Below, piece after piece: positions 1 to 36,662 of a DNA stretch of 64,000 nt (position 1 is the stretch's first letter; each line of letters opens with the position of its first letter). The notes below the pieces were generated by a model. The model had not been told where the DNA came from. It saw only the letters and a list, made by a program, of their open reading frames with translations, and searched no databases. A program made the translations under genes and the position numbers. The stretch spans positions 62,001 to 126,000 of IMG/VR virus record IMGVR_UViG_3300038424_000251. One strand, written 5' to 3'.

Positions 1-153
1 TTCAACACCATTACAACCGATAAGAAAAGACAGTTGACGTTAAGAGAACTATTTTATATAATGTATGGAAAAGATGCACAATTTATTGATGTTGAGAATG
101 TTATGGAGATTGCTAGAACCATCAATAAACTTTTTTTATTGAGAGAAGTATAA
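1..153 (+). CDS. 3' end of a gene truncated by the window edge (…MYGKDAQFIDVENVMEIARTINKLFLLREV*), possibly a vWA/CobT-like C-terminus
   Basis: Frame 1 is open from base 1 to TAA at 151-153; the product guess is weak. Confidence 0.55.
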   Translation, partial: FNTITTDKKRQLTLRELFYIMYGKDAQFIDVENVMEIARTINKLFLLREV

Positions 154-860: not shown

Positions 861-1369
861 CTTTTTCCTTTGTAAGTCATAAAAAGTTTGAAGGAATTTT
901 TAACTGCAATGTCTTCTTTATAGTAAAAAATAGTTGATGTTTTACTAATTTTATTTATTACTGCTTGAATTCTTTGATTAGACCCATAGGCCAAAGGCAT
1001 ACCAAATTCATCGTCAAATATCACCGATAAAACAGGACTGATTTTGAAATGATGATAGAAGAATTTATTAGGGTCCAGATAATGATATCTTAATGGTGGT
1101 TTTTGATGTAAGCCTTCTCCTTTGATTTCTATATATTTATTTGGTCCTTTTTCAAAAAACATTTGAGAATTCAATTCATAGTAAAACACAAAAGAATTTG
1201 GAGGAAGTTTGGTAGATTTTATAATAGCTATTGAACCTATCACAATAGGCATATCCATTTTAGCATCAAACAAAGCATCATTAGTCTCACTAAGTTTAAA
1301 ACAATGATAATATTTTGGTTTCGGTTGTTTTTTTATAACTTCTTTATCATTGACTTTATTTGTTGGCAT
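857..1369 (-). CDS. hypothetical protein with internal duplication (YHCFKLS…FDAKMDMPIVIGS / YHHFKIS…FDDEFGMPLAYGS)
   Basis: 170 aa ORF with two similar ~80 aa halves. Confidence 0.7.
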   Translation of the reverse strand: MPTNKVNDKEVIKKQPKPKYYHCFKLSETNDALFDAKMDMPIVIGSIAIIKSTKLPPNSFVFYYELNSQMFFEKGPNKYIEIKGEGLHQKPPLRYHYLDPNKFFYHHFKISPVLSVIFDDEFGMPLAYGSNQRIQAVINKISKTSTIFYYKEDIAVKNSFKLFMTYKGKS

Positions 1370-1377
1370 AATACAAT
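1350..1377 (+). promoter_or_regulatory. sigma70-like promoter TTGACT-16-TACAAT, 6 nt before the ATG at 1384 (leaderless)
   Basis: Motif match; lies inside the start of the divergent gene. Confidence 0.6.
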
Positions 1378-1383
1378 ATAAGT

Positions 1384-2724
1384 ATGAGTGAAGAATCTTT
1401 TTTCAATTTTGAACCACGGTCTGATGATATCAAGAAGAAAATATCAGAAGAAAGAAAAAAGATGAATGAGCCATTGGGGAAATATGCAAACAATGACATC
1501 GTTAAATCTACAACGGGAGAAGATATTTTTAATTTTGAAAAAAATAAGCAGAAACTTATAGATGATTTGAATTGGTTAAAATCTCTCAAAGTTGAAGAAT
1601 TTACATTTCGTAAAAAATTTGAAGAAATTCAATTGGTAAATGATTTTATTAAAAAATATGATACTAGAGCAAAAGCTAGAATATGGGAACCGACAAATAT
1701 CAATGATGAAGAACTTACCATTAAGGAAATCAACATTCTTCAACCGAAAGTAATTGTTGTTGTTGATGAATTTCAAGAACGGCTTTGGACTACTTTGAGA
1801 ATTTATTGCAGCACAGCAGAATATAACCAAGCACCCGGACGATTCATAAAATTCCTAATGATAGATAATATATCAAATCAAGTGTTGGGTATAGCTTCTA
1901 TTGCTAGTGATGTTATTTCTATATCTGCCAGAGATAAATTTATTGGTTGGACATCAGAAGATAAATTACAACACAAAATGTTGAAATATTCTGCTATAGG
2001 AACTACTATTGTTCCTACACAGCCACTTGGAATAAATTTTTTAGGTGGAAAACTTATAGCAGCATTGGTGACTTCTGATGTAGTTAGAAATGAATGGGAA
2101 AATGAAGATTTAGATAAAACAAAATCTAAACCCTGTAAGTTAGTTGGAATGACAACTACCAGCTTATATGGTCGTCCCTCTATGTATGATGCCATGAAAT
2201 GGTGGAAAGGTGTTGGACTTTCAAAGGGTAAAATACCCATTAAACCCTATGAAGATGTTTATAAAGATTGGCATGATTGGTTAAAGCAATATAAAAAAGA
2301 AAAGTATGATGAAGCTATGAAACAGAAAGAAGGCGTATCTGGCCCAGTTACAGGCGCAAAAATGAGAGTATTGTCGATGATATTTGATGCTTGCGACATT
2401 AAGCAATCAGAATATTGCCATGGATATGAAAGAGGTGTTTATTATTCGTGTTTTTATGAAAATACAAAAGAATTTCTCTGTAGAAAAATTACAGAGAATA
2501 AATTAGTTATGAAACCACTATTTAAAGATGGGGTAAAAGCTATTTTGGAATGGTGGCGACCAAAAGCTATACAAAGATATAAAAAATTGAAAGCAGAAGG
2601 AAGATTGAATCCGAACAAACTGTTTTATAATGAAATGGATAGAAATATAGTTTATCCTTCCATGACGGATAAAGAGGCATATAATGAAGTAAAGAAAAAA
2701 TTCTTCATTGATGTAGGCCGATAA
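1384..2724 (+). CDS. DUF4338/DruA-like protein (GNAT/Mom-related fold), long form
   Basis: PGRFIKFL…LGIASIASD…RDKFIGW…IVPTQPLG.NFLGGKLIA…TTSLYG motifs typical of DUF4338. Confidence 0.8.
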   Translation: MSEESFFNFEPRSDDIKKKISEERKKMNEPLGKYANNDIVKSTTGEDIFNFEKNKQKLIDDLNWLKSLKVEEFTFRKKFEEIQLVNDFIKKYDTRAKARIWEPTNINDEELTIKEINILQPKVIVVVDEFQERLWTTLRIYCSTAEYNQAPGRFIKFLMIDNISNQVLGIASIASDVISISARDKFIGWTSEDKLQHKMLKYSAIGTTIVPTQPLGINFLGGKLIAALVTSDVVRNEWENEDLDKTKSKPCKLVGMTTTSLYGRPSMYDAMKWWKGVGLSKGKIPIKPYEDVYKDWHDWLKQYKKEKYDEAMKQKEGVSGPVTGAKMRVLSMIFDACDIKQSEYCHGYERGVYYSCFYENTKEFLCRKITENKLVMKPLFKDGVKAILEWWRPKAIQRYKKLKAEGRLNPNKLFYNEMDRNIVYPSMTDKEAYNEVKKKFFIDVGR

Positions 2725-2735
2725 TAATAAACCCT

Positions 2736-2909
2736 ATGGGAAGAACATACAGAAAAAATGACAGGTGGAAGAAGGACCGAAGGGACCAAAACTTCAAGAA
2801 AAGTAAAAAATTCAAAAAATTTAAAAATGGTAAATTTAAACCATCTAAATTAAATCTGCCAAAAGTAGAAAATGAACTAACCGATACAGATGATTCTATT
2901 GATTCTTAA
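2736..2909 (+). CDS. small highly basic protein (57 aa, MGRTYRKNDRWKKDRR…), not on the ORF track
   Basis: ATG 2736 to TAA 2909 fills the intergenic gap; K/R-rich with acidic tail. Confidence 0.6.
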   Translation: MGRTYRKNDRWKKDRRDQNFKKSKKFKKFKNGKFKPSKLNLPKVENELTDTDDSIDS

Positions 2910-3258
2910 AATTTTAATTTGGATATTACTTTGCGGAATAATATATTATCTACTGTTGCGTATCCAAAAACTAAAAATACGTTTGGATGCGTTCACATAT
3001 GCTACATTGATATCCAATGGAAAAGATTTGAAAAGTATTTGTGACAAATGTAAAAAATATGGATTAACTAGAGATGAAATAGAATCAGTTGTTAGTGTAT
3101 ATAACTTACATACCAATATAAATTCTTTACATAAGAGTCAAAAAGTGTTAGTGTCATCTATTAAAGAGTTATACAGAGTATTAAGAAGGTATGATAAAAA
3201 TTTCAGACGACAAATCAAAATCGACATTGGTAAAGAAACGAGGACGGAAGAAACTTGA
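2890..3258 (+). CDS. hypothetical membrane-anchored protein
   Basis: N-terminal hydrophobic helix. Confidence 0.6.
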   Translation: MILLILKILIWILLCGIIYYLLLRIQKLKIRLDAFTYATLISNGKDLKSICDKCKKYGLTRDEIESVVSVYNLHTNINSLHKSQKVLVSSIKELYRVLRRYDKNFRRQIKIDIGKETRTEET

Positions 3259-3727
3259 AAACCCGACAATAAAAGGAATAGGGTTGTTTGACCATGTTAA
3301 ACATATTCGTTCTATTCAAAACTCCGATTACTTTAAAAGTTTGACTGAATTAGACGTGAAATCGTTTAATCATTTTATGATACTTAAAGCATTAAGTATG
3401 AATCCCGCTCTTTTAGAAGATATTTCTACTTTATTCAGATATTTTGATAAAATACCATCACCACAATTTTATCAACTTCTTATCGGTTTAATTCCTCCAG
3501 ATAAAAGATTTTATCCTTGGGTTAAAGCTAAAAAAGTTCCGTTCAATGTAAAATTGATTGAATTGATATCAATGTATTTTGAAATTTCTCAAAAAGAAGC
3601 TGCAGAATACGCAACGTTGTTATTCTCAACTGATAAAGGTAAAAAAGAATTGGAAAACCTTTGTAGAGCTTATGGATTGACGGATAAGGAAGTTGAAGAA
3701 ATTATGAAAGGATATGATGATGAATAA
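3191..3727 (+). CDS. clamp loader small subunit, T4 gp62-like
   Basis: FNHFMILKALS…QFYQLLIGLIPPDKRFYPWVKAK…LISMYFEISQKEAAEY pattern matches the gp62 family. Confidence 0.75.
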   Translation: MIKISDDKSKSTLVKKRGRKKLENPTIKGIGLFDHVKHIRSIQNSDYFKSLTELDVKSFNHFMILKALSMNPALLEDISTLFRYFDKIPSPQFYQLLIGLIPPDKRFYPWVKAKKVPFNVKLIELISMYFEISQKEAAEYATLLFSTDKGKKELENLCRAYGLTDKEVEEIMKGYDDE

Positions 3728-4133
3728 AAGTATTATAACTAAGAAAATAATAACAGATTCTAAACCAAGTTTTGTAATTAAAGATTCGGGTAATAGGCAA
3801 AAATATATTACTGGTGCTCAAAGAGATACGCAAGAAGGAAAAGGTAGATTTGACCTTCTTCCTGTTCATGCTATAACTAGGCTTGCCCAACATTTTGAAA
3901 ATGGTGCAAAAAAATATGATGCAGATAATTGGAGAAGAGGAATACCTCTTAATCGTTATTTAGATTCTGCTCTTAGACATTTGTTTGAATTTGCTGATGG
4001 CGAAAAGGATGAAGACCATGCTATTGCTGCTGCGTGGAATATTCTTTGTCTTGTAGAAACGGAATATATGATTAAAAAAGGTATTCTCCCAAAAGAATTG
4101 AATACTCTTAGAAAATTACCAAAAGAAAATTAA
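3714..4133 (+). CDS. dATP/dGTP diphosphohydrolase-domain protein (DUF5664)
   Basis: GKGRFDLLP…GAKKYDADNWRRGI…DSALRHL…EDHAIAAAWN. Confidence 0.85.
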   Translation: MMMNKSIITKKIITDSKPSFVIKDSGNRQKYITGAQRDTQEGKGRFDLLPVHAITRLAQHFENGAKKYDADNWRRGIPLNRYLDSALRHLFEFADGEKDEDHAIAAAWNILCLVETEYMIKKGILPKELNTLRKLPKEN

Positions 4134-4136
4134 ATC

Positions 4137-4877
4137 ATGTCTGTTGAAGTTTCTTTTTTTGATATCAAAGTAAAACCTAATTCTCCTGTATATTTGGTGG
4201 AATGTGATTCACCAGAACAAAACAAGATTTTCAGAAATACCATTGATAATTTTCACAGTTATGTAAAATATACCGATTCTCCTACACGAAATCTTAGATG
4301 GTTAGTCTATGAAACAGAGTCAGGCAATCAAATAGGCGCAATTGGGCTATCTTCTGCTACTATTGCTGTATCAATCAGAGATAAATTTATAGGTTGGGAT
4401 AATAAAACCAAAATAAAAAACTTATGTAACTTAGCAAATAATTCACGATTTTGTTTAGCTCAACCTAGGATTTCCATAAAGAATGCTGCATCTTCAACTC
4501 TTAAACAATTGAGGATTGAGGGAGCTAAACGGTGGAAAGAAAAATATGGAGATGAACTTATTTTATTAGAAACTTTTGTTCAACCTGAAAGAGATGAAGA
4601 ATATCAAGGAAACAAAACTCGTCGTGGTTCATGTTATCGTGCTGATAATTGGATGGAGTTAGGTCTTACCAGTGGAAGTTCTTTCAAAAAATGTCCATTA
4701 TTACTATGGCAAAAGGAAACTGGAGAAAGAGGAAGAATTGCAAGAGAGAATCCTAAACTTGCTATGGAAACGTATGGAAATTATGGTGGTAAACAATATA
4801 TTGTAACTCAATCTAAGCAAAAACTAATGTTTATAAAACCCCTAGTTAAAAATTGGAAAAAAAGACTAACCCAATAG
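4137..4877 (+). CDS. DUF4338/DruA-like protein, short form
   Basis: HSY…RNLRWLV…IGAIGLSS…RDKFIGW…ANNSRFC…LETFV…GSCYRADNW. Confidence 0.85.
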   Translation: MSVEVSFFDIKVKPNSPVYLVECDSPEQNKIFRNTIDNFHSYVKYTDSPTRNLRWLVYETESGNQIGAIGLSSATIAVSIRDKFIGWDNKTKIKNLCNLANNSRFCLAQPRISIKNAASSTLKQLRIEGAKRWKEKYGDELILLETFVQPERDEEYQGNKTRRGSCYRADNWMELGLTSGSSFKKCPLLLWQKETGERGRIARENPKLAMETYGNYGGKQYIVTQSKQKLMFIKPLVKNWKKRLTQ

Positions 4878-5617: not shown

Positions 5618-6916
5618 ATGAATCAACGTTCTCCGAAAGACAAAATAAGGGATTTAATATCAGATTTAAAAAAAGATGCATCTATACCTCAATTTTGTTA
5701 TAATATAAATAGCAAAAATGATTCTGTGTATTATGGTGGCCCATTATATGATGACGAAGAATTGACAGAAGCTATATACACATTATTATTTGGAAAGTGG
5801 TTAGTATCAGGTGAAAATGTGAACAAATTTGAGAAAGAGTTTTCTGTTTATATAAATTTAAAATATTCTCTCATGGTAAATTCTGGAAGTTCTGCTAACT
5901 TACTTATTGTTTTAACTCTTAAAAAATATCTCGGATGGAAAGACAATGATGAAATAATAGTATCATCTGTTGGATTTCCTACTACTGTAAATCCAATTAT
6001 TCAATCTAATTTAAAACCTGTCTTTTGTGATATAGAATTAGATACATTGAATTTTGACATAAATGAGATAAAGAAAAAAATAAACAAAAAAACAAAGGCT
6101 ATCATAGTCTCCCCTGTATTGGGAAATCCACCCAATATGACAGAATTGAAATCTTTGTGTAAAAATCATGATATCATAATGATAATGGATGGGTGTGACT
6201 CTTTGGGAAGTAAGTGGGATGATAAACATTTGGCTGAGTATGGTATAATGTCCAGTTGTTCTTTTTATCCAGCACACCATATCACGACAGGAGAAGGAGG
6301 TATGATATCAACCAATAATGAAGAGTTGATTAATTTATCAAGAAGTTTAGCTTGGTGGGGAAGAGGATGTCATTGTGTTGGTCCTGCTAATTTATTAAAA
6401 AATGGAAGTTGTGGAAGTAGATTTTCAAATTGGATACCAGAATTAGACTTTATAACAGACCATAGATATTTTTATCCCAATATAGGATACAATCTAAAAC
6501 CATTAGATTTACAGGGTGCAATTGGATTAGCTCAATTGAAAAAACTAAATTATATACACTCCAAAAGAACAGAATATAAGAATAGAATTCAAAAAATTTT
6601 ATCAAGGGTAAAAAAATTATCATTTCCAAAGCAATATAATAATGCATATGTATCTTGGTTTGGAGTTCCAATAATTTGTGAATCGTCAGGTGTAAAAGAA
6701 AGATTTGTGAAGTATTTGGAATCTAATAGAATACAGACTAGAAATTATTTTGCAGGTAATTTACTTTTGCATCCTGCATATAAGCATTTAGATAACTGGA
6801 AATTGTATCCGAATGCTAATATGGTATTGGAAAAAATATTTTTCATAGGATGTTCTCCAACTATGACAGACAAAAATATAGATTACATTGAAGAAGTAAT
6901 ATCAAAATATGAATAA
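5618..6916 (+). CDS. rfbH: CDP-4-keto-6-deoxyglucose 3-dehydratase (E1, DegT/DnrJ family)
   Basis: VNSGSSAN, SFYPAHHITTGEGG (His in place of the PLP Lys), GRGCHC…SCG Fe-S cysteines, GYNLKPLDLQGA. Confidence 0.85.
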   Translation: MNQRSPKDKIRDLISDLKKDASIPQFCYNINSKNDSVYYGGPLYDDEELTEAIYTLLFGKWLVSGENVNKFEKEFSVYINLKYSLMVNSGSSANLLIVLTLKKYLGWKDNDEIIVSSVGFPTTVNPIIQSNLKPVFCDIELDTLNFDINEIKKKINKKTKAIIVSPVLGNPPNMTELKSLCKNHDIIMIMDGCDSLGSKWDDKHLAEYGIMSSCSFYPAHHITTGEGGMISTNNEELINLSRSLAWWGRGCHCVGPANLLKNGSCGSRFSNWIPELDFITDHRYFYPNIGYNLKPLDLQGAIGLAQLKKLNYIHSKRTEYKNRIQKILSRVKKLSFPKQYNNAYVSWFGVPIICESSGVKERFVKYLESNRIQTRNYFAGNLLLHPAYKHLDNWKLYPNANMVLEKIFFIGCSPTMTDKNIDYIEEVISKYE

Positions 6917-7751
6917 AATAGATTTATTTGGTGGAACAGGTTTTATAGGTTCTCATTTTAAGAAGTTATATGGTGATGATGTGTATGTTCATCCAAGAAA
7001 TTCTGCCAAACCAGTTACAGACAACGTGTTATACATGATAAGTACCACCGACAATTATAATGTATATAGCGACTTGATGGTGGATATTGATACAAATTTG
7101 ACTCACTTATTAAGAGTTTTGGATTATTATAGAGATGATGAATCATTAAGAAAAAATTCTATTTTTAATTTTGTAAGTTCGTGGTTTGTGTATGGAAAAA
7201 TTTATGATTTACCTGCTAAAGAAACGTCTATTTGTAATCCCAAAGGATTTTATTCCATAACTAAAAAATGCGCAGAAGATTTATTAATATCTTTTTGTGA
7301 AACATATGATTTGAAGTACAGAATTTTTAGATTATGTAATGTCTATGGTATAGGTGATAAAGACGTATCGAAAAGAAAAAATGCTTTACAATACTTAATA
7401 AATGAAATAAAAAATAATAGACCTATACAATTATATTATGGTGGGAATTTTATCAGGGATTATATGGATGGAGATGATATTTGTAGAGCTATTAATTTGT
7501 GTATGAACGTTTCTAATGTCAATCAAATCATAAACATAGGAAGCGGAATACCACAAAATTTTGGAGAAATTATACATTCTGTAGTTAAAGAAACCGGTTC
7601 GACCAGTTTAATAACTGCTATAGACCCTTCTGATTTCCACAAGCATGTTCAAGTGAAAGATATGTATTTAGATATTACTAAACTTAAAAATTTGGGATTT
7701 ATACAACAGGTCAAAATATTTGATGGCATTAAAAAGATTTTAAATTCGTAA
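6909..7751 (+). CDS. NAD-dependent epimerase/reductase (nucleotide-sugar SDR)
   Basis: GGTGFIG, YSITK (YxxxK), RLCNVYG, RDY. Confidence 0.85.
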   Translation: MNKIDLFGGTGFIGSHFKKLYGDDVYVHPRNSAKPVTDNVLYMISTTDNYNVYSDLMVDIDTNLTHLLRVLDYYRDDESLRKNSIFNFVSSWFVYGKIYDLPAKETSICNPKGFYSITKKCAEDLLISFCETYDLKYRIFRLCNVYGIGDKDVSKRKNALQYLINEIKNNRPIQLYYGGNFIRDYMDGDDICRAINLCMNVSNVNQIINIGSGIPQNFGEIIHSVVKETGSTSLITAIDPSDFHKHVQVKDMYLDITKLKNLGFIQQVKIFDGIKKILNS

Positions 7752-8496
7752 CAGGGTCATGTTTTGGATAACTACCCCATTTATATTTGAAATACTCAAA
7801 TCCTTCTACTTCTTTTTTTCTTGTATTTTCTGCTTGTTCAGATGACCTAGTTCCAATACTGACAAAATGGTAAAAATTACAGTTGTAATTTCTATTCAAA
7901 TTCATTTTACATAAATTACATTTTAAGAAAAAGTCCCAATCAACAACGTTTCCACTAGGATATGTTTCATCCCAACCACCAACTTTTAGATAATTGGTTT
8001 TGGACATTAAAAACGGCAATGTTGACCCGCAAGAATCAACTTTATTTTGTCGCATTGTAGATTCCAATCTATAAAAATTATTCAAGTCAAATGTTTTTGC
8101 ATTTGTTCCAAAATCATATTTTATGAACTGCTTGAACATACTGTCATAAGGCTCTATTTGATTTGGACTTACAACATCGGTTTCCTTGTTGAAATTCTCT
8201 AGCAAAATTTTATCCCATTCTTTAGGGAATACGTTATCATCGTTGACAACTAAAATATTTTCAAAAGATGCATTATATACTCCAAAATTGGTTGACTTTG
8301 ATTGTCCATAATTACTTTCAAATATAATTGGAATTATTTGACTCTCATACTTTTTCAATATAGAATTGTTTATATCCAACGTTCCATCTATAACTACAAT
8401 TATCTCATTCTTGTAAATTTGGCTGCTTAATGCAGACCTGATGCACAAATCAAGATAATCGGGTTCTTTGTATGTTGGAATTATTACAGAAATCAT
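7729..8496 (-). CDS. glycosyltransferase family 2
   Basis: ISVIIPTY, VVIDG, NDDN, VGGWDE…DWDF. Confidence 0.85.
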   Translation of the reverse strand: MISVIIPTYKEPDYLDLCIRSALSSQIYKNEIIVVIDGTLDINNSILKKYESQIIPIIFESNYGQSKSTNFGVYNASFENILVVNDDNVFPKEWDKILLENFNKETDVVSPNQIEPYDSMFKQFIKYDFGTNAKTFDLNNFYRLESTMRQNKVDSCGSTLPFLMSKTNYLKVGGWDETYPSGNVVDWDFFLKCNLCKMNLNRNYNCNFYHFVSIGTRSSEQAENTRKKEVEGFEYFKYKWGSYPKHDPVTNLKSF

Positions 8497-9200
8497 AAAA
8501 TCTCATTGTCCCAATTTATTAGTGGCGCTAACCAAGGCAAATCGCCATGTGTGGAATAACTTGGAATCGGTGTTATCAATGTTCTTCCTTTGTCTCTTAA
8601 TTTCAAGAACATTCTGAAATCTTCGGGATAAGAACCAACTGTCCATTTTCTAAGTATAGGTTCATCTTCTCGTAATGTCTTTAATTTAGCTGCAAATGTC
8701 ATTGTTGTGGAATTGGTAAGTTTCCAATGACAGGATTTGCTTAGAAATACTTTGGTTATTTCACCACCATTTTCAATAAAAGGATTTCCACCTTTATCAC
8801 CATTCAAATATTTGTCAGGATGGTCATATAAGGAAATATAATCTGTACCTATATCAAATCCTTCTTCCATTATTGACTTTGAATTTTTACGGTGGATATA
8901 ATCATTTTCAACAAAATAGATTATTTCATCATCATTTTTTTGTTTTAATGCTAAATCTAACACTCTGTTGAAAGTCTGTGCGCTACTGCCCAAATTTGAT
9001 GAAATAATTGTATCTGCTGAAACTATATCTTGGACCATTTTATAAGTCTCATCGCAAACTCTATCAACTAAAATAAAAAAATTGTTGAGTTTATTATTGA
9101 GGAAATTTCGCTTAAAATTTTCGAGACAATTTTTATTGTTTATAAGGGGATGTTTTATTTTCTTATAACCAGCATCACTTAATCTGTAAAATATTATCAT
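8493..9200 (-). CDS. putative GT-A fold glycosyltransferase
   Basis: IIYFVENDYIH (DxD-like); cluster context. Confidence 0.6.
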   Translation of the reverse strand: MIIFYRLSDAGYKKIKHPLINNKNCLENFKRNFLNNKLNNFFILVDRVCDETYKMVQDIVSADTIISSNLGSSAQTFNRVLDLALKQKNDDEIIYFVENDYIHRKNSKSIMEEGFDIGTDYISLYDHPDKYLNGDKGGNPFIENGGEITKVFLSKSCHWKLTNSTTMTFAAKLKTLREDEPILRKWTVGSYPEDFRMFLKLRDKGRTLITPIPSYSTHGDLPWLAPLINWDNEIL

Positions 9201-9837
9201 AACTTTTATTTTTAAATATCAAATCTTCCTGTAATAGTTCACCATTCAAATAATGAGAATAAGGACTATCAACTACTATAAAATTTATATATTTCAAATA
9301 ATTTACAACCTCATCTTTTAATGGAGCGCCTTCGTTACAACTTTTTAAGGAAACTTCCAACAATAGATATTTTGATTTTTTTATGGTGTTTATTCCACCT
9401 TTTATGATATCTAATTCAGAACCTTGAGTATCTATTTTTATCAAATCGTATGTATCAGTTACAAGATTATCTAATATATTCATTGGAAGATATATAATTT
9501 CACAATTTTTATCATTAAAAAATTCTGATATTTCTCTATAAATTGAATTTCCTGTTGAACCTCTTTCTGTTTTATTGATATAGAATTTAACACTTGATTT
9601 CTCTTTATCTCCTAATAATGCTATTATGTAATGAATGCCCATACTCTTTAAAGCGTTTTCAAAAAAAGGATTAGCTTCAATCATTGTAAAACTAGCAGCC
9701 GGCCATACAGTTTTACATAAATTTGTAAACCATCCATTACTAGCACCAATATCCAAAATAGTATTTGGTGTAAAATTGAATTTATTTTTTATACCGTGTA
9801 AAGCACTTAAATCCATATTATACTTTTGTTTTATCAA
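9175..9837 (-). CDS. FkbM-family SAM methyltransferase
   Basis: LDIGASNG, EANP, LIKIDTQGSELDIIKG. Confidence 0.9.
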   Translation of the reverse strand: MIKQKYNMDLSALHGIKNKFNFTPNTILDIGASNGWFTNLCKTVWPAASFTMIEANPFFENALKSMGIHYIIALLGDKEKSSVKFYINKTERGSTGNSIYREISEFFNDKNCEIIYLPMNILDNLVTDTYDLIKIDTQGSELDIIKGGINTIKKSKYLLLEVSLKSCNEGAPLKDEVVNYLKYINFIVVDSPYSHYLNGELLQEDLIFKNKSYDNILQIK

Positions 9838-10765
9838 TCACATATTTTACTATATGTTCTGTTGTTAAATTATTTGTTAAATATGTATGTAGTTTATCAT
9901 TGATTTCGTGATATTTGTCATAATCAATTTCTATATCATTGAAAGTATTCAAGTCAAAATTTGTTATAGCATTTTTATCATTATATATGAATTTATTTTC
10001 TAATACAGTTTTATCAAATCCTTTGAATATATTAAAAACTTCTTCCAATGTTTTCTTAGGAAGCTTTTGTAAACTTTGTTTTGGACAATGTTTTATGTCT
10101 ATAAACAGTGGAATACATTTATTCATTATTATTTCATAATGACGAAGAGAATCCCAAGATGCTTTCTTCCAAGTATATCCAAACATAGATTGTTGGTAAT
10201 CTTCATAATAAGATTTTTCATCATTAAATACTAATGTTTCTATTATTCCCGGAATATTAGTTCCTATTAATTTATTTTTCTGTAATTCTCCTATATATAT
10301 TTTTTCTTTTGGTATTGAAAAATTTATAGGAATGACATCTTTTGTCTCATTTTCTATAAATGTTTTAAAATACAAACCTTTATTTAGTAGAGAATAATTC
10401 ACATCTGATGTATCACTACCATCTATAAAAACTATTTTATTTTTATCATAACAAGAAAATACTAAATCAATCAAATCCAAATTTCTATAAATTGCTCCAT
10501 AAATAACCAAGTCAAAATATTTATTTTTTATTTTATTTTCTATGTCTGTCCTATCTATGTTGTCGGATTTTTTCACAGTTCCACATAAAGTAAAACCTCT
10601 TCCATGAAAAGTATTAATTAGTGAAGATTTATTTATGTCATCATACATATACCATTGCGGATATAAGTCTATTATATCATCACCAAATAGAGATTTCAAT
10701 CCATGAAACAGAGAATCTGCCATGAAATCACTCATATGAAATTTAAAGATGTATAATATTTTCAT
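9818..10765 (-). CDS. putative glycosyltransferase (GT-B/exostosin-like)
   Basis: YYEDYQQSMFG…KKASWDSLRHYEIIMNKCIP; cluster context. Confidence 0.55.
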   Translation of the reverse strand: MKILYIFKFHMSDFMADSLFHGLKSLFGDDIIDLYPQWYMYDDINKSSLINTFHGRGFTLCGTVKKSDNIDRTDIENKIKNKYFDLVIYGAIYRNLDLIDLVFSCYDKNKIVFIDGSDTSDVNYSLLNKGLYFKTFIENETKDVIPINFSIPKEKIYIGELQKNKLIGTNIPGIIETLVFNDEKSYYEDYQQSMFGYTWKKASWDSLRHYEIIMNKCIPLFIDIKHCPKQSLQKLPKKTLEEVFNIFKGFDKTVLENKFIYNDKNAITNFDLNTFNDIEIDYDKYHEINDKLHTYLTNNLTTEHIVKYVIDKTKV

Positions 10766-10791
10766 TATAATTTACATTATATAGCATATTT

Positions 10792-11529
10792 TTATTTCCT
10801 GTATAGTTTAAATTCTGTTATACTTTGCCATTCTGTTAAGTCACCGTAATATTTTTTGAACATATCTGTTGGCACATGTTTATAACTTGAGTCGTTAAAT
10901 GGGATAGTGTATGTATAGTTTCCCCACTTTTTTGTAACATATTCAGCATTGTATGTTCTGGTTTCTGATGGAATCGGTGAGTTAAGATAAGTGGATGAAT
11001 TTCCGTTAAAGTAATGGGGTATGTTTAAACTGATTACTTTTACATCATTTAATTTACAACGGTATTTATAATCATTATCCTCACATCCAGCAAATAAAAA
11101 ATTTTCATCAAATCTTCCTACGGTGTTCCATGTATCTTTGTGTATTCCATATAAAGAGAATTCAAAAGAATTATCATAGGTTCCACATAATACTTTAGGA
11201 GATGTTTGTATGGTTATTTCATTTAAAATTTCTTCTGAAAATCTAGCATCTTCTTCTCCTATTATTATCTTATCTAACTTCATTGTATTAAATGCTATAT
11301 CACAGATTAAATTCCAACCAGCAGAACAGCAAATTTTCTTTGTGGTAAGATAGATGACATTATTTTTAATGTAATCAGGTATTTTTTGTTGGCCATTATC
11401 TATGAAGTACATTTTTGTATTTGGATTATCTTCATGTTTATACCATTCACAAAAATAGTCCACGGCATTATATCCTAATATGAATAAATTATTTTTTATA
11501 TTAAATTCTCTCATAACATGCCCAAGCAA
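10792..11529 (-). CDS. GT2-like glycosyltransferase
   Basis: FIDNG, SAGWN, EED, VGRFDENF..AGCEDNDY. Confidence 0.75.
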   Translation of the reverse strand: MLGHVMREFNIKNNLFILGYNAVDYFCEWYKHEDNPNTKMYFIDNGQQKIPDYIKNNVIYLTTKKICCSAGWNLICDIAFNTMKLDKIIIGEEDARFSEEILNEITIQTSPKVLCGTYDNSFEFSLYGIHKDTWNTVGRFDENFLFAGCEDNDYKYRCKLNDVKVISLNIPHYFNGNSSTYLNSPIPSETRTYNAEYVTKKWGNYTYTIPFNDSSYKHVPTDMFKKYYGDLTEWQSITEFKLYRK

Positions 11530-12133
11530 CTTGCTTAAAATCTGTTTTTGTATATTCTTTCAGATTATTTTTGGTTATAATATCTTTTATATTCTCATAT
11601 CTTATTTCTATCCAACCCCAACCTGAATATGGACCATAATCATGAGCCATTATAACATCTTGTGACTTTAGGAAATCTGCAAAATGATTAAATTCTTTTG
11701 GTTTGTCGCCACCGTCACACAATAAGCATACTTTTTTATTTGATGCTAGTATATCTTTTATGTATTTAATCGATGCTTCGGAAAAACAATCGTCATAAAT
11801 GCCTTTTATATTATTTTTATCAAAATATTCACGCAATCTATCTGAATATTCTTTACTCATATCTGTCATTTTTGTGGTATCATATAAATGGATATCAAAT
11901 GTATGAATATTATACGAAAGATTATGCTTTCTCTTTATTTCATTTAATATTATCGTAAGACCGCCTTTATTGGTTCCAATTTCTATTACTTCATCAAATT
12001 TCTTATCTATCATCAATTTCTCAAAATAATCAATTACAATAAACATTTGAGAAGCAATCCATTCTTCTTTGGAGTTTTTGATTGTAAAACCAAATCCTCC
12101 TCCAGTTCCCCATTTACTAATAATTTCTTCCAT
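11501..12133 (-). CDS. class I SAM-dependent methyltransferase (CmcI/Methyltransf_24-like)
   Basis: VIEIGTNKGG, TFDI, CDGG, AHDY. Confidence 0.75.
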   Translation of the reverse strand: MEEIISKWGTGGGFGFTIKNSKEEWIASQMFIVIDYFEKLMIDKKFDEVIEIGTNKGGLTIILNEIKRKHNLSYNIHTFDIHLYDTTKMTDMSKEYSDRLREYFDKNNIKGIYDDCFSEASIKYIKDILASNKKVCLLCDGGDKPKEFNHFADFLKSQDVIMAHDYGPYSGWGWIEIRYENIKDIITKNNLKEYTKTDFKQVAWACYERI

Positions 12134-12143
12134 AAAATATATT

Positions 12144-13037
12144 TTATTTCATTATTTTTTTAATTTCATCAATAACTTCATCGTCTGTTAAATACGGGTC
12201 CAATACTATATGCCTTTTATCTTTAAAATAATAAATAGGTCCAAGTTTCGGTTCTTTTATTTTTTTTATCACTCCATTCCATCCGTATAGTTGAAGGACA
12301 AAATCGCCCGTTGTAATAGTTCTGCATCCAACGCCACAAGCCATATTACACAGACCGCCTTCTGCTCCAAGGAAAACATCACAATGCTTCATCAAAGAGC
12401 ACTCAAATAAAAGAGATTTCTGATTGCCATCTGTAATGGAAATAGTAGATACTTGTGGTGTTTTTGGGGGAAACCCTATTTCAACAAAATTGAATGTGTC
12501 AGATAAACAAGATAAAATATAGTTTGTATTTCTGTGTTTTCCACCATAACCGAAATCAGGAACATCAATTCCTAATTCATATTCTTTTTTTGTGAATAGA
12601 AAACTTCTTTCAGACCAATTGGCAGCATGTGCTACCACTTTTTTACCATTCTTTCTTAGTTCATCTATAATGTTTTTTGCTACTTCATCATAGGATGAGT
12701 CTGTATAGACAGTAAATTCTGTATCTGGATTTTTTACACTAGCCCATTTTTGGCACTCTAATGGTGGTGGTTCTAAGAAAGAAAACGGTTTCATGTTTAT
12801 TACTTCATCATAATTTTCTAATATGTCTTCGGGAACAGTTGGATATGGCGTTGGAAAAGGAAGTAATCTTACTTTGTCTATGTATGGATTATTAGATAAG
12901 AGTCTGTAAATTTGAGGGAAGGCTATCACATACTCTATTTCATCAAATTTCTTTTCTTCTTTTAATTTTTTAGCAATTGAACTCTGGAAAAAGATATCTC
13001 CAAAATATCCAAAAGTTATTATCAAACATTTATGCAT
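12144..13037 (-). CDS. GT9 (heptosyltransferase-like) glycosyltransferase
   Basis: FGDIF, LSNNPYIDKV, CDVFLGAEGGLCNMACGVG. Confidence 0.75.
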   Translation of the reverse strand: MHKCLIITFGYFGDIFFQSSIAKKLKEEKKFDEIEYVIAFPQIYRLLSNNPYIDKVRLLPFPTPYPTVPEDILENYDEVINMKPFSFLEPPPLECQKWASVKNPDTEFTVYTDSSYDEVAKNIIDELRKNGKKVVAHAANWSERSFLFTKKEYELGIDVPDFGYGGKHRNTNYILSCLSDTFNFVEIGFPPKTPQVSTISITDGNQKSLLFECSLMKHCDVFLGAEGGLCNMACGVGCRTITTGDFVLQLYGWNGVIKKIKEPKLGPIYYFKDKRHIVLDPYLTDDEVIDEIKKIMK

Positions 13038-13395
13038 ATGACTTTTCTTCTATTAGATTAGAATTGGTTTTTTCGTTGATTACTCTTTTTATCCATGATC
13101 TTGCATCATTATTGATATAAATTGTTCTAGCTATTTCAATAAATTCTTTATCAAATAATTGTTGGTCTTCCTTATATCGTATTTTATCTTCGGCATCCCA
13201 TAATATTTTGTTTACTGTTTTTAACGAAACTAAGAAAGAATTAATAGTAGGGTCTTCTAAATTAAAAATGGATTTTAATTGTTCTAGTTCTTTCAATACA
13301 TTTTTTCGTTTTTCTTCGTCGGTTATATTCTCTAATTTAATCATTAAAATAGATATTTTGTCAAGTATTTCTCCATTTGATACTTCAATCTTCAT
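13030..13395 (-). CDS. DUF6165-family protein
   Basis: EVSNGEILDKISIL.IK…LWDAEDKIR…IYINNDAR..IKR.IN…EEKSY. Confidence 0.8.
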   Translation of the reverse strand: MKIEVSNGEILDKISILMIKLENITDEEKRKNVLKELEQLKSIFNLEDPTINSFLVSLKTVNKILWDAEDKIRYKEDQQLFDKEFIEIARTIYINNDARSWIKRVINEKTNSNLIEEKSYA

Positions 13396-13399
13396 AAAA

Positions 13400-16705: not shown

Positions 16706-16725
16706 ATATTTTTTATGTTAAATTT

Positions 16726-17715: not shown

Positions 17716-17718
17716 ACT

Positions 17719-19149: not shown

Positions 19150-19160
19150 TATTGGATATC

Positions 19161-21217: not shown

Positions 21218-21227
21218 ATTATGATAC

Positions 21228-21926: not shown

Positions 21927-21933
21927 GTAACCA

Positions 21934-21961
21934 ATTATATCGTAAAAATTGGATTATTCAA
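21934..21961 (-). promoter_or_regulatory. sigma70-like promoter TTGAAT-16-TATAAT, 7 nt before the dut ATG
   Basis: Motif match on the minus strand. Confidence 0.65.
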
Positions 21962-21965
21962 GTTT

Positions 21966-22172
21966 CTATAATTTTATTTCTAAAAGGTCTATGGTTGTAG
22001 ATGATTTATCATATATGATAATAGGTAATTTTTTGTTACTAATTCCTATTTCTTTTGACATTTCATCACCTATTTTATTGGCATATTTTTTATAATCTTC
22101 CTGTTTTCCGAAACGATTACTATCAAGACCTATCAATAAAACCGTCTTAGTTTTGGGTTTTATTTTTTTCAT
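21966..22172 (-). CDS. hypothetical protein
   Basis: 68 aa ORF coupled to the upstream GT. Confidence 0.55.
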   Translation of the reverse strand: MKKIKPKTKTVLLIGLDSNRFGKQEDYKKYANKIGDEMSKEIGISNKKLPIIIYDKSSTTIDLLEIKL

Positions 22173-24531: not shown

Positions 24532-25077
24532 TTATTTTATTCTTTTCGGATAAAGCTTTGGTGGCAACTTATTTCTGAGAGCTTTTATATTACCACGAAG
24601 AATATAAGCGTATTTATGAAATCCTGTTTTGGATTTACCAAGATATATTGCGTTGGTGGCTTGATAAACTGTTCCAATATGACCAGCTTTTTCATTGGCA
24701 TTTGTTATCACCACTTTTACGTTGGGTTCGTCTTGTTTTAGGAGTTTTAGTGTTTGTGCGATAACATAAGATTCCAGATTAGGAATACCAACGTCAGCAA
24801 GATATAATCTTTTCAAATCCAACACTTCTCCCGACATAGCTTCTGGGCTTAGAAATTTTGAAGCAGAATACATTGGAAGTCCATATATAGCCATCCCAAT
24901 TGCCATCTTTTGTTGGCCATGAGGATATTTGTATCTCACGACATATATTCTTTTGACGCGAGCTGGTATAGTATGAAGATAATGTTTCTTAGCTAGTTGT
25001 ATTATTGCTTCCCTTGTAGCAGGAACAACCTCTACTTCATCTTGTAATCCTTCAATAATAAGCTTTTTAAGATTCAT
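24532..25077 (-). CDS. Mom-like (GNAT fold) DNA modification protein
   Basis: KHYL, IGMAIYG.P, LKRLY…PNLES..IAQTLK, GHIGTVYQATN..YLG. Confidence 0.75.
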   Translation of the reverse strand: MNLKKLIIEGLQDEVEVVPATREAIIQLAKKHYLHTIPARVKRIYVVRYKYPHGQQKMAIGMAIYGLPMYSASKFLSPEAMSGEVLDLKRLYLADVGIPNLESYVIAQTLKLLKQDEPNVKVVITNANEKAGHIGTVYQATNAIYLGKSKTGFHKYAYILRGNIKALRNKLPPKLYPKRIK

Positions 25078-32185: not shown

Positions 32186-32224
32186 CATTCTATATTATGA
32201 TGGAATGAATAATCTATTATAATA

Positions 32225-32253
32225 TTGACGTAACTTTGAAAAGAAGTTACAAT
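32225..32253 (+). promoter_or_regulatory. sigma70-like promoter TTGACG-17-TACAAT with overlapping inverted repeat GTAACTT-N7-AAGTTAC
   Basis: Direct sequence; precedes the R-M pair. Confidence 0.7.
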
Positions 32254-35638: not shown

Positions 35639-35868
35639 AAATAAAAAGTAAAAAATTAAGTAAAATTGAAAAAGAAATTGGTAAATGTATGGAAAAGTAT
35701 ATAGGAGAGCCTATAGATGATATCACTTTGTCAAAAATTGAAAAATCAGTCCAAAAATTAATAAATAATTGTTTTCCAAATCAATATAAAGTTATAATGG
35801 ACAGGTCAAATAATTCTCCAAAAAATATAGACAATCAAATTTTAAATATTGACCTAATTTTAAAATGA
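35635..35868 (+). CDS. mini-protein resembling the contractile tail sheath C-terminal domain
   Basis: IGEPIDDIT…YKVIMDRSNNSPKNIDNQILNIDLILK compared with the sheath consensus FEPND..T…V.CDE.NNTP..ID.N.L..DI. Confidence 0.55.
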   Translation: MKIKSKKLSKIEKEIGKCMEKYIGEPIDDITLSKIEKSVQKLINNCFPNQYKVIMDRSNNSPKNIDNQILNIDLILK

Positions 35869-36662
35869 AGTTTGATTACACAATCAAAGAAGTAAATAAA
35901 TTTACCGCAGCTAAATTAGTTCAACAACATCACTATTCCAAGGTAATGCCTAAACTTACCAAGCATTATCTTGGTGTATTTATTGGTGATAAGATGGTTG
36001 GTGTACTAACTCTTGGATGGGGAACGCAACCCCGCCAAACTATCAATAAACTTTTTCCCGGTCTTACAACCAAGGACTATTATGAAATTGGTAAGATGTG
36101 TATGCTTCCTGAAATGCCCAAAAATTCTGAATCACAAATGTTATCTGCAATTATCAAATGGATAAAAATACATTTGCCAGAAAAGCTATTTCTATATACA
36201 TGGGCTGATGGTATTGTTGGTAAAGTTGGTTATGTGTATCAATCAGCAAATTTCTATTATGGTGGTTTCATTTGGACGGATATTTATATTAGCCCTGATG
36301 GGGAGAAAATTCATCCAAGAACCTCACATAATCTTTGTATAGAGAATGCTAAGTTTTGTAATAAAGAAAAGATATTCTGGTTGACCCGAGATTTTATGAA
36401 ATTGAAAGGAATCACTAGAATAAGAGGAAAACAATTCAGATATATTATGCCTTTATCTAAAATGGCTAGAAAAATGCTTGACAAATCTACTGTTAGATGG
36501 ACAATAGATTATCCTAAAGAAGAAGATTTAGAATGGAAAAAACAAATTGATGGTGGTTATGAACTAATTAAAGAATTGCCAAAAATTGATTTGGGAATGG
36601 TCAATATAAATAAAAAGAATGTCAATTCTTATAAAAGGGAAGAAAATCAATTTTTTGGATAA
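35865..36662 (+). CDS. Mom-like (GNAT fold) DNA modification protein
   Basis: HHYS, VGVLTLG, EIGKMC…PKNSESQMLS, TWAD….GYVYQSANFYYGG. Confidence 0.8.
   Translation: MKFDYTIKEVNKFTAAKLVQQHHYSKVMPKLTKHYLGVFIGDKMVGVLTLGWGTQPRQTINKLFPGLTTKDYYEIGKMCMLPEMPKNSESQMLSAIIKWIKIHLPEKLFLYTWADGIVGKVGYVYQSANFYYGGFIWTDIYISPDGEKIHPRTSHNLCIENAKFCNKEKIFWLTRDFMKLKGITRIRGKQFRYIMPLSKMARKMLDKSTVRWTIDYPKEEDLEWKKQIDGGYELIKELPKIDLGMVNINKKNVNSYKREENQFFG

What the first reader, a model, noticed from the sequence alone, without database searches (positions are those of the whole stretch)
1384..4877. Two DruA-like genes bracket gp62 and a dATP/dGTP diphosphohydrolase in one operon, with no other Druantia genes
Seen: one plus-strand unit from a leaderless sigma70 promoter encodes long DUF4338, a basic peptide, a TM protein, gp62, DUF5664 and short DUF4338. 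Established: DruA is known from the Druantia type I defence system, which depends on a DruE helicase; none is adjacent here. DUF5664-type enzymes can reshape purine dNTP pools. Inference: DUF4338 is co-opted as a replication-associated purine-modifying enzyme or an anti-defence decoy, working with purine-pool editing.
Basis: partly seen in the sequence, partly recalled or inferred. Interest (0 to 1): 0.7.

Follow-up and report, generated by a model that had tools for sequence, protein, structure and literature searches.

The report
Mom-like DruA enzymes in phage replication operon
A 365-kb wetland jumbo phage carries, next to its clamp-loader gene 62, two enzymes of the DruA family that turn out to be relatives of the phage Mu DNA-modifying enzyme Mom, so they most likely modify nucleic acid for the phage and are not part of a Druantia defence system.

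Summary
Window 1384-4877 is a tight plus-strand run of six genes: long DruA/DUF4338 (446 aa), a basic peptide, a membrane protein, a gp62-like clamp-loader subunit, a DUF5664 dNTP pyrophosphohydrolase and short DruA/DUF4338 (246 aa). A promoter-like element conserved in nine related phages precedes it. The 365-kb phage genome has no DruB, C or D, no DruE hallmark domain and no PurZ.

Both DruA-like proteins model confidently as GNAT folds. For both, the best solved match is phage Mu Mom, which transfers glycine from Gly-tRNA to adenine N6 in DNA. The short form aligns to the Mom family (hhalign 96.5%) and keeps Mom's H58/Y59, R111, N121, S124 and Y159 equivalents. The long form is a full-length structural homologue of E. 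coli DruA with a different conserved motif set.

The long gene sits in the replisome module in cyanophages and pelagiphages, and beside gene 62 in 77 of the 80 best IMG/VR loci (525 related contigs). The short gene is a lineage-specific addition; in other phages it lies beside tandem Mom genes.

The DUF5664 link is weak, because sister phages carry a dNMP-kinase-like gene in that slot.

Most likely both are nucleic-acid-modifying acyl or aminoacyl transferases. Substrate and chemistry are untested.

The parts
1350..1384 (+). Conserved promoter-like element TTGACT-N16-TACAAT-ATAAGTA that abuts the ATG of ORF A. It could be read as a sigma-70-type promoter giving a leaderless mRNA, or its 3' part TATAAGTA could be read as a T4-late-like box.
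   Evidence: Consensus scan. Hexamers are invariant and the spacer varies in 9 related loci. The motif is unique in the window, with 0 expected. The transcription start is not mapped.
1384..2724 (+). ORF A, the long DruA/DUF4338 protein (446 aa). It has an N-terminal helical region, a GNAT core at about residues 115-368 and a C-terminal helical region.
   Evidence: PF14236 5.6e-26; PADLOC DruA PDLC00002 5.6e-24; phrog_19197 3.9e-28. Model pLDDT 85.8. E. coli DruA P0DW34: Foldseek E 1.5e-17, TM 0.62/0.67 over residues 48-428. Best PDB match is Mom 8bv8: Foldseek E 6.8e-3, VIA Z 9.9. More than 1000 homologues found.
2736..2909 (+). ORF B, a 57-aa lysine/arginine-rich peptide with an acidic tail.
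   Evidence: ORF list. Conserved in 19 related loci. No family match.
2890..3258 (+). ORF C, a 122-aa protein with a hydrophobic N-terminal segment.
   Evidence: ORF list. Conserved in 17 related loci. No significant family match.
3191..3727 (+). ORF D, a gp62-like clamp-loader small (A) subunit (178 aa).
   Evidence: PF16790 1.9e-6 (28.8 bits, cut-off 27); phrog_225 4.4e-15. BLASTP 6e-6 to cyanophage gp62. Found downstream of the long DruA gene in 77 of 80 related loci. The RFC-like gp44 lies 35 kb away at 38972-39955.
3714..4133 (+). ORF E, a stand-alone DUF5664 protein (139 aa), probably a dNTP pyrophosphohydrolase.
   Evidence: PF18909 1.5e-23; phrog_18716 1.1e-34; phrog_801 2.6e-22. It is the only copy in the genome. 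The stand-alone DUF5664 of phage Wayne converts dATP, dUTP and dGTP to dNMP, with dATP preferred (PMC12884076).
4137..4877 (+). ORF F, the short DruA/DUF4338 protein (246 aa). It is a Mom-like GNAT with three short helices inserted at residues 186-215, between the last core strands.
   Evidence: PF14236 1.9e-22. Model pLDDT 92. Best PDB match is Mom 8bv8: Foldseek E 2.8e-7; VIA Z 15.1 over 178 aligned residues, against Z 13.5 or less over about 135-150 residues for generic GNATs. hhalign to the Mom family: 96.5%, E 7e-10, pairing H40/Y42, R104, N116, S119, Y167 and N171 with Mom H58/Y59, R111, N121, S124, Y159 and N163.
35865..36662 (+). Mom-family paralogue (265 aa) in the replication module. 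It belongs to the same GNAT superfamily and to the same genome's modification repertoire.
   Evidence: PF25680, 3.4e-55. Alignment with Mu Mom.
24532..25077 (-). Short Mom-family paralogue (181 aa) that lacks the region of Mom's HTH-like insertion.
   Evidence: PF25680, 1.1e-23. Alignment A4.

Best explanation
The region is a conserved early or replication-module gene cluster of a T4-related jumbo phage from peat and wetland samples. It is not a defence system.

Its two 'DruA' genes encode enzymes of the Mom/DUF4338 branch of the GNAT superfamily.

Short form (ORF F). It has Mom's fold, a helical insertion at about the place of Mom's HTH-like insertion, and equivalents of Mom's H58/Y59, R111, N121, S124 and Y159. 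I infer that it works like Mom: it binds duplex DNA, takes an activated acyl group (most likely an aminoacyl group from a charged tRNA) and transfers it to an exocyclic amine of a base. This would protect phage DNA from host nucleases.

Long form (ORF A). It is the true structural counterpart of Druantia DruA. It lacks the Mom Arg/Ser pair but has its own invariant motifs: QPxGxN-FLGGKL after strand 4, where GNATs bind the CoA pyrophosphate, and TTTSLYG. I infer that it is also an active acyl-transferase, perhaps with a CoA-type donor, acting on newly replicated DNA or on a replisome-linked substrate. The basis is that its gene has stayed within the replisome gene block (gp44, gp62, DNA polymerase) in distant phage lineages.

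ORF E is a dNTP pyrophosphohydrolase that trims the dNTP pool. Its link to the two GNATs is loose.

Shown: the folds, the family relations, the residue conservation, the synteny and the absence of Druantia and PurZ genes. Inferred: the substrate (DNA), the donor, the chemistry and the protective role.
For: Fold and family:
- ORF F model: pLDDT 92.
- Mom 8bv8 is the top solved match by Foldseek (E 2.8e-7) and by VIA (Z 15.1, with 178 aligned residues against 135-150 for other GNATs).
- Among viral models, F's matches include Mom of Salmonella phage FSL SP-031 (rank 3) and many fusion proteins annotated as (homing) endonuclease-like.
- The short-DruA profile against the Mom profile gives 96.5%, E 7e-10. 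The alignment puts F H40/Y42, R104, S119 and Y167 on Mom H58/Y59, R111, S124 and Y159. R111 and S124 are essential in Mom (PMC13219725).
- The same H, R, S and Y positions are at least 90% conserved in 58 bacterial homologues. Of those 58, 11 score on both Pfam DruA and Pfam Mom, with a best Mom E-value of 1.8e-11.
- ORF A model: pLDDT 85.8. Full-length match to E. coli DruA (E 1.5e-17). The GNAT core is best matched by Mom. The A and F families are homologous (98.9%).

Context pointing to DNA:
- The long gene lies between gp44 and gp62 in Synechococcus phages S-SCSM2R and S-PRM1, and directly after the DNA polymerase gene in pelagiphage HTVC008M.
- gp62 lies downstream of it in 77 of the 80 best IMG/VR loci, out of 525 related contigs.
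- In this genome gp62 stays with the DruA gene although gp44 is 35 kb away.
- In other viral contigs the short gene is followed by two tandem Mom genes (L109-L111) or by one (L106).
- This genome also has three Mom genes and an N6-adenine methylase beside its DNA polymerase.
- Bacterial short-type domains are fused to Tn5-type, DDE_5 and IS66 transposases and to LAGLIDADG endonucleases.

Enzyme, not decoy: 20 residues are invariant across jumbo-phage, pelagiphage and cyanophage long forms.
Against: - No biochemical or DNA-chemistry evidence exists for any DUF4338 protein. The authors of the Mom study state that donor and substrate could not be predicted from the structure.
- ORF F lacks direct equivalents of Mom D149 and R151. 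It has Q149 and E151, with only a neighbouring R152. R151 is essential in Mom.
- ORF A lacks the Arg/Ser pair, and its family shows no profile match to Mom. Its Mom match is barely above generic GNATs (Z 9.9 against 9.5).
- Neither ORF A nor ORF F reaches Pfam's Mom model at E 0.1 or better.
- Conserved gene order in T4-like replication modules can be inherited without any functional coupling.
- A fold of gp62 together with ORF A gave no answer.
- GNATs acylate proteins, small molecules, tRNA and aminoacyl-tRNA as well as DNA.
Confidence: 0.5

Rival explanations
1. Pre-replicative pathway. One or both GNATs act on free purine nucleotides, and the neighbouring nucleotide enzyme completes the pathway. 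DUF5664 would make dAMP or dGMP from dATP or dGTP, the GNAT would acylate the dNMP, and a kinase would re-phosphorylate it so that a modified purine is incorporated during replication.
For: The slot just upstream of the short DruA gene always holds a nucleotide-metabolism gene. Here and in 3 other loci it is DUF5664. In the other sister loci it is a P-loop kinase resembling dNMP kinase; PF21448 and PF04275 pass their cut-offs only in L026. Pelagiphage Mosig has a MazG-domain gene directly after its DUF4338 gene. Stand-alone DUF5664 hydrolyses dATP, dUTP and dGTP to dNMP.
Against: The pyrophosphohydrolase and the kinase replace each other and do not co-occur; this genome has no homologue of the kinase. 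Most phages with the long DruA gene have neither enzyme beside it. Mom, the closest characterised relative, acts after replication on duplex DNA. There is no PurZ. The Mosig MazG protein and ORF E are unrelated in sequence.
Confidence: 0.12
2. The GNATs acylate something other than DNA: a replisome or host protein (as the phiKMV Rac acetyltransferase does with RNA polymerase), a tRNA (as TmcA does), or an aminoacyl-tRNA (as TacT-type toxins do). The purpose would be to take over host functions early in infection.
For: Generic GNAT acetyltransferases, RimI and the TmcA/NAT10 RNA cytidine acetyltransferases follow closely behind Mom and DruA in the fold searches. Jumbo phages carry many GNATs predicted to modify host proteins (PMC7824862). 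The genome encodes 53 tRNAs, and a tRNA cluster that includes two tRNA-Gly genes lies about 2.7 kb from the third DruA paralogue.
Against: Mom is the top solved match for both proteins, and ORF F shares Mom-specific residues and extra aligned elements. The domain is repeatedly fused to DNA-acting enzymes and clustered with Mom genes. The long gene keeps its place among replisome genes.
Confidence: 0.2
3. Anti-defence decoy. A catalytically irrelevant DruA mimic binds and blocks host Druantia type I partners (DruB-E).
For: ORF A is a full-length structural mimic of E. coli DruA, and no DruB-E is present in the phage.
Against: Invariant enzyme-like motifs are kept across very distant phages. The gene is present in phages of Pelagibacter and Synechococcus and in hundreds of environmental contigs, always inside the replication module. 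There are three paralogues in one genome. The host is unknown, as is whether it has Druantia type I.
Confidence: 0.05

Closest known systems
Phage Mu Mom (PF25680; PDB 8bv8), a Gly-tRNA(Gly)-dependent transferase that modifies adenine N6 in duplex DNA
   Same: GNAT fold. It is the top solved match for both ORF F and ORF A. ORF F shares the H-Y, R, N..S and Y..N motifs, a helical insertion late in the fold, and a profile-profile match at 96.5%. It is phage-encoded. Multiple paralogues per jumbo phage are already known for Mom, and this genome has three Mom genes as well.
   Different: ORF A and ORF F do not reach Pfam's Mom model. ORF F lacks D149 and R151 equivalents. ORF A lacks R111 and S124 equivalents and has extra N- and C-terminal helical domains. 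No activity is known. The genes sit in a replication module, not at a late, Com-regulated locus as in Mu.
DruA of Druantia type I (E. coli P0DW34; PF14236, DUF4338)
   Same: ORF A matches it over nearly its whole length (TM 0.62/0.67). All three paralogues of this genome pass the Pfam cut-off, and ORF A and the third copy match PADLOC's 407-position DruA model across the core.
   Different: No DruB, C, D or E is present. The genome is a phage, not a defence island. ORF F shares only the core. The function of DruA in Druantia is itself unknown.
DruA-like genes of T4-like cyanophages and pelagiphages (phrog_19197). The Phold preprint noted them as structural look-alikes of DruA, and one GenBank record annotates its copy as 'methylcarbamoylase mom'.
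   Same: Homologues of ORF A at 24-33% identity that share its 20 invariant residues. They lie beside gp44/gp62 or the DNA polymerase gene.
   Different: Those phages have one or two long copies and no short form next to gp62. Here gp44 has moved 35 kb away, and a short Mom-like paralogue, a DUF5664 gene, a basic peptide and a membrane protein have joined the unit.
DUF5664 / MazZ-type dNTP pyrophosphohydrolases of Z-genome (2-aminoadenine) phages
   Same: ORF E has the same Pfam domain (83 bits) and is stand-alone, like the characterised phage Wayne enzyme.
   Different: There is no PurZ, and the domain is not fused to DUF550. DatZ and DpoZ were not searched for. DUF5664 also occurs in phages with canonical DNA.

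Membership tests
Druantia type I defence system (DruABCDE) | DruE helicase with the MZB/DUF1998 domain | tested here: not met
   PF09369 finds nothing in the 365-kb genome. The control rang in 8 of 14 genomes. The largest ORF is 1620 aa.
Druantia type I defence system (DruABCDE) | DruB, DruC and DruD genes next to druA | tested here: not met
   PADLOC models PDLC00003, 00005, 00007, 00009 and 00012 give no match anywhere in the genome. No control genome rang, so sensitivity is unverified.
Druantia type I defence system (DruABCDE) | DruA (PF14236) protein | tested here: met
   ORF A 91.8 bits, ORF F 80.2 bits, third copy 96.7 bits, against a cut-off of 27. ORF A is structurally full-length DruA-like.
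Mom family (PF25680), momylation enzymes | Match to the family model | tested here: inconclusive
   No Pfam Mom hit at E 0.1 or better for ORF A or ORF F. The short-DruA family profile matches a Mom profile at 96.5%, E 7e-10. Of 58 bacterial short-type homologues, 11 hit both models. The long-form profile has no match.
Mom family (PF25680), momylation enzymes | GNAT fold with an extra HTH-like insertion near the C-terminal strands | tested here: inconclusive
   The GNAT fold is met. ORF F has three short helices at 186-215 between late strands and aligns 178 residues to Mom 21-230. A residue-level superposition of the insertion was not available.
Mom family (PF25680), momylation enzymes | Essential residues R111, S124 and R151, plus H58, Y59, D149 and Y159 | tested here: inconclusive
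   ORF F has R104, S119, H40, Y42 and Y167 aligned. Q149 and E151 take the places of D149 and R151, and R152 is adjacent. ORF A does not have the R/S pair, judged from the A1-A3 alignment.
Mom family (PF25680), momylation enzymes | Transfer of glycine from Gly-tRNA(Gly) to adenine N6 in dsDNA | not testable with these tools
   Needs the biochemistry used in PMC13219725.
GNAT acyl-CoA N-acyltransferases | Motif A (Q/R-x-x-G-x-G/A) after strand 4, which binds the CoA pyrophosphate | tested here: inconclusive
   ORF A has an invariant Q213-P-x-G216-x-N218 followed by G221-G222-K223 after strand 203-211. ORF F and Mom have N..S there instead. No ligand modelling was done.
T4 gp62 clamp-loader subunit (PF16790) | Family model match, and partnership with the gp44 gene | tested here: inconclusive
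   The Pfam score is just above the cut-off (28.8 against 27). PHROG gives 4.4e-15, and cyanophage gp62 gives 6e-6. gp44 exists but lies 35 kb away.
DUF5664 dNTP pyrophosphohydrolase / Z-genome pathway | PF18909 domain; for the Z pathway, PurZ as well | tested here: not met
   The domain is present (83 bits), but PF00709 (PurA/PurZ) is absent and the control rang in 14 of 14 genomes. ORF E is therefore a DUF5664 member, but not part of a Z-DNA pathway.

The most novel reading that the evidence does not exclude
The whole DUF4338/DruA family, in phages and in Druantia type I alike, consists of Mom-like enzymes that install a still undescribed acyl or aminoacyl mark on DNA bases. In aquatic T4-like phages (cyanophages, pelagiphages and this jumbo clade) the long form would be a replisome-coupled modifier that marks nascent DNA. 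Abundant environmental phages would then carry an unknown DNA hypermodification. In Druantia type I, DruA would be the self-marking component, as the methylase is in type II.
Probability: 0.2. Interest if true: 0.85.

Novelty: new variant of a known kind. Interest (0 to 1): 0.55.

Why it matters
DruA is a defining but mechanistically blank component of Druantia type I. Mom's chemistry, charged tRNA as the donor for a DNA base modification, was solved only recently.

The DruA family bridges to Mom. One phage sub-family keeps Mom's catalytic residues. Another sub-family is fixed inside the replisome gene block of cultured cyanophages and pelagiphages and of hundreds of uncultured phages. Together these give a concrete hypothesis that can be tested in cultured phages: unknown DNA base modifications in ecologically dominant phages, and a modification role for DruA in defence.

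It also warns annotators that a PF14236 hit does not indicate a Druantia system.

Tried and rejected
- **Mu Mom as a single sequence against the long-DruA profile:** no similarity. The long-DruA profile against the four-member Mom profile also gave none. Only the short family bridges to Mom.
- **Nucleotide search of the region against GenBank phages:** no match. tblastn with ORF F against the same collection found nothing either.
- **ORF E against PDB sequences:** no match.
- **Co-fold of gp62-like ORF D with ORF A (residues 46-446):** score 0.00, with the verdict 'no answer'. This is not evidence either way.
- **Scan of bacterial genome contigs with the long-DruA alignment:** a single MAG hit, because the search patterns were specific to the phage clade. 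Bacterial Druantia DruA sequences could therefore not be compared residue by residue.
- **Upstream neighbours compared with pelagiphage genes:** the 755-aa protein and the AAA_5 ATPase were compared with the pelagiphage 'peptidase' and CobS-like genes. The AAA match is generic (2e-7) and the 755-aa protein gave nothing. The upstream ATPase is not the clamp loader; it is AAA_5.
- **Pelagiphage Mosig MazG protein against ORF E:** unrelated in sequence.
- **RNA runs to test the operon and the transcription start:** none was listed. The DNA holders are peat and wetland metagenomes.
- **Search of viral contigs with the short-family alignment:** The single-protein search reaches only close relatives.
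- **First structure job:** It was re-run without them.

Full report
**What is there**

The window is G000:C1:62001-126000 of a 365,299-bp IMG/VR phage record that CheckV rates as 100% complete. GC content is about 30%. Near-identical sequence is held by at least 24 peat and wetland metagenome runs.

Positions 1384-4877 hold six co-directional ORFs that abut or overlap, bounded by minus-strand genes on both sides. Their family matches are:
- ORF A (446 aa): Pfam DruA/DUF4338 at 5.6e-26.
- ORF F (246 aa): the same family at 1.9e-22.
- ORF D: the phage clamp-loader A subunit. Pfam is marginal at 28.8 bits against a cut-off of 27. phrog_225 gives 4.4e-15, and BLASTP to a cyanophage gp62 gives 6e-6.
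- ORF E: PF18909 (DUF5664) at 1.5e-23.
- ORF B (a basic peptide) and ORF C (an N-terminal membrane segment): no family, but conserved in 19 and 17 related loci.

**Promoter**

TTGACT-16-TACAAT ends 6 nt before the ATG of ORF A. On its own this is not above chance in such AT-rich DNA. However, in nine related loci the TTGAC and TACAATATAAGTA blocks are invariant or nearly so, while the spacer and flanks vary. The composite motif is unique in the window. It is a real conserved element.

Whether it gives a leaderless mRNA is open. Its 3' part, TATAAGTA, is one mismatch from the T4 late-promoter box TATAAATA, as recalled from memory. If that box is the working element, transcription would start inside the annotated N-terminus. 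No RNA run was listed that could decide this.

**Not Druantia, not a Z-genome**

The genome has three PF14236 genes; the third, of the long type, lies at G000:132607-133419. It has no MZB/DUF1998 domain, no match to the PADLOC DruB, DruC or DruD models, and no adenylosuccinate-synthetase/PurZ homologue.

**What the DruA-like proteins are**

ORF F gave a high-confidence model (pLDDT 92):
- Its best solved match is the crystal structure of phage Mu Mom (8bv8): Foldseek E 2.8e-7, and VIA Z 15.1 with 178 aligned residues. Ordinary GNATs reach Z 13.5 or less over 135-150 residues.
- Its best Swiss-Prot model match is E. coli DruA (E 4e-12).
- Among viral models, its matches include Mom of Salmonella phage FSL SP-031 (rank 3) and many fusion proteins annotated as (homing) endonuclease-like.

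A profile of 51 short-type sequences was aligned to a Mom profile built from Mu Mom and this genome's three Mom paralogues. The result was 96.5% probability, E 7e-10, over 167 columns. It pairs F H40/Y42 with Mom H58/Y59, R104 with R111, N116 with N121, S119 with S124, Y167 with Y159, and N171 with N163.

The 2026 Mom study shows that Mom transfers glycine from Gly-tRNA(Gly) to adenine N6 in duplex DNA. It also shows that R111, S124 and R151 are essential, that H58, Y59 and Y159 are important, and that an HTH-like insertion at about residues 175-209 is required (PMC13219725). ORF F has no direct equivalent of D149 or R151. It does have helices at 186-215, between its late strands.

ORF A gave a model with pLDDT 85.8:
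- It matches E. coli DruA over almost its whole length: A 48-428 on DruA 8-392, E 1.5e-17, TM 0.62/0.67.
- Its GNAT core, at about residues 115-368, is best matched by Mom, but only marginally (Z 9.9 against 9.5).
- The A and F families are clearly homologous (98.9%).
- The long form replaces Mom's Arg/Ser pair with its own invariant set: PGR, RD..GW, QPxGxNFLGGKL, TTTSLYG, Y268 and others. Twenty of these residues remain invariant when pelagiphage and cyanophage homologues are added.
- QPxGxN sits where GNATs carry the CoA-binding motif A. This rests on established knowledge of GNATs, and a CoA-type donor is only an inference.

**The family is not Druantia-specific**

ORF F has 1768 cluster representatives at E 1e-3 or better. 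Among 58 longer homologues:
- 55 hit Pfam DruA.
- 11 also hit Pfam Mom (best 1.8e-11).
- Many are fused to Tn5-type, DDE_5 or IS66 transposases or to LAGLIDADG endonucleases.

The Aravind group had already called DUF4338 a GNAT domain (PMC10853773). The Phold preprint noted DruA-like structures in six Synechococcus phages.

**Synteny**

ORF A has more than 1000 homologues and relatives on 525 IMG/VR contigs. In the 80 best loci, a gp62-like gene lies downstream in 77.

In GenBank, 31 records carry the gene; they are Synechococcus myoviruses, pelagiphages and two marine virus records. Examples:
- S-PRM1 and S-SCSM2R: the gene lies between gp44 and gp62.
- HTVC008M: one copy directly follows the DNA polymerase gene.
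- S-SCSM2R: the depositors annotated it 'methylcarbamoylase mom'.

In this jumbo phage the RFC-like gp44 is at 38972-39955, 35 kb away, next to DNA polymerase B, an N6-adenine methylase and a Mom gene. Even so, gp62 has stayed with the DruA gene.

The short gene is present only in the closest subclade, 15 of the 83 loci examined, not counting the window's own contig. In unrelated viral contigs it is followed by two tandem Mom genes (L109-L111) or one (L106), or it lies near a long DruA gene.

**The DUF5664 link**

DUF5664 lies between gp62 and the short DruA gene in only four loci, one of which is the window's own contig. Elsewhere in the subclade the slot holds a 226-263-aa P-loop kinase resembling dNMP kinase; its Pfam scores are mostly below threshold. 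That kinase has no homologue in this genome.

Stand-alone DUF5664 of phage Wayne is a pyrophosphohydrolase acting on dATP, dUTP and dGTP, with dATP preferred (PMC12884076).

**Interpretation**

The best-supported reading is that both proteins are active Mom-superfamily GNAT transferases acting on nucleic acid. This is most likely for ORF F, by analogy with Mom. ORF A is tied to the replisome module.

The rivals are:
- a dNMP-level pathway that uses the neighbouring nucleotide enzyme;
- acylation of a protein, a tRNA or an aminoacyl-tRNA;
- a DruA decoy.

The decoy fits the conservation pattern worst. Nothing here shows substrate or chemistry. A co-fold of gp62 with ORF A gave no answer.

**Novelty**

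The fold assignment and the presence of DruA look-alikes in cyanophages are already in the literature. The following appear to be new:
- the profile-level and residue-level bridge between the short DUF4338 sub-family and Mom;
- the split of the family into a Mom-like short form and a DruA-like long form with different active-site motifs;
- the breadth and constancy of the long form's place in replisome modules;
- the clustering of the short form with Mom genes.

Together they amount to a testable new variant of a known kind of system.

Noticed in passing
G000 whole genome (outside the window): 128814-129946, 235500-295096, 260388-260791: ARAGORN finds 53 tRNA genes and a tmRNA. They include three tRNA-Gly genes and a tRNA with anticodon CTA, which would read UAG. 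A cluster of six tRNAs (Leu, Leu, Met, Ile, Gly, Gly) lies about 2.7 kb from the third DruA paralogue. All genes studied here read open in code 11, and no recoding was assumed.
   Followed up: no
window 29588-39955: A replication block that is rich in modification genes: DNA polymerase B (29588-32185), an Eco57I-type N6-adenine methylase (32984-34594), a Mom gene (35865-36662), a Macro-domain protein (37003-37548), YopX (37545-37967) and the RFC-like gp44 (38972-39955).
   Followed up: partly
window 24532-25077 (-) and 23936-24466 (-): A 181-aa Mom-family paralogue lacks the region of Mom's essential HTH-like insertion. It sits next to a NUMOD4/HNH homing-endonuclease gene.
   Followed up: no
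window 5618-23653: A large sugar-modification island on both strands. It includes a DegT-type aminotransferase, an NAD epimerase/dehydratase, GT2 and GT4 glycosyltransferases (one borderline to the 'GT4 in conflict systems' family) and a B12-binding radical SAM enzyme. Related phages have different sugar genes at the same place.
   Followed up: no
L097 (P0158), L096 (P0243) and alignment A6: Bacterial short-type DUF4338 domains are often fused to, or lie next to, transposases (Tn5-type, DDE_5, IS66) and LAGLIDADG endonucleases. Of 58 such proteins, 11 score on both the Pfam DruA and the Pfam Mom models. PADLOC's 675-position DruA model has about the length of the fusion proteins seen here (602-796 aa).
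   Followed up: partly
L016:2648-3328, L008:7987-8667, L026:9713-10456 and similar loci: In sister phages the slot that holds DUF5664 here is filled by a 226-263-aa P-loop kinase resembling dNMP kinase and phosphomevalonate kinase. This genome has no homologue of it.
   Followed up: yes
L109-L111 (4001-6040), L106: In other viral contigs of 135-162 kb, a short DruA-like gene is followed directly by two tandem Mom-family genes.
   Followed up: partly
window 38017-38028: AATATAAATATG, which contains TATAAATA (recalled from memory as the T4 late-promoter box), runs directly into the ATG of the 250-aa ORF at 38026. This resembles the TATAAGTA-ATG junction in front of ORF A.
   Followed up: no
G000 58918-62153 (window 1-153 holds the end); L015:2535-5767: Upstream of the unit, and conserved with it in 64-71 of the 80 loci, are an AAA_5 (MoxR/CobS-like) ATPase of 323 aa and a 755-aa protein with no family match. 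A Mom gene lies about 2 kb further upstream. CobS-like ATPase genes also lie near the DruA-like genes of pelagiphages and of S-PRM1.
   Followed up: partly
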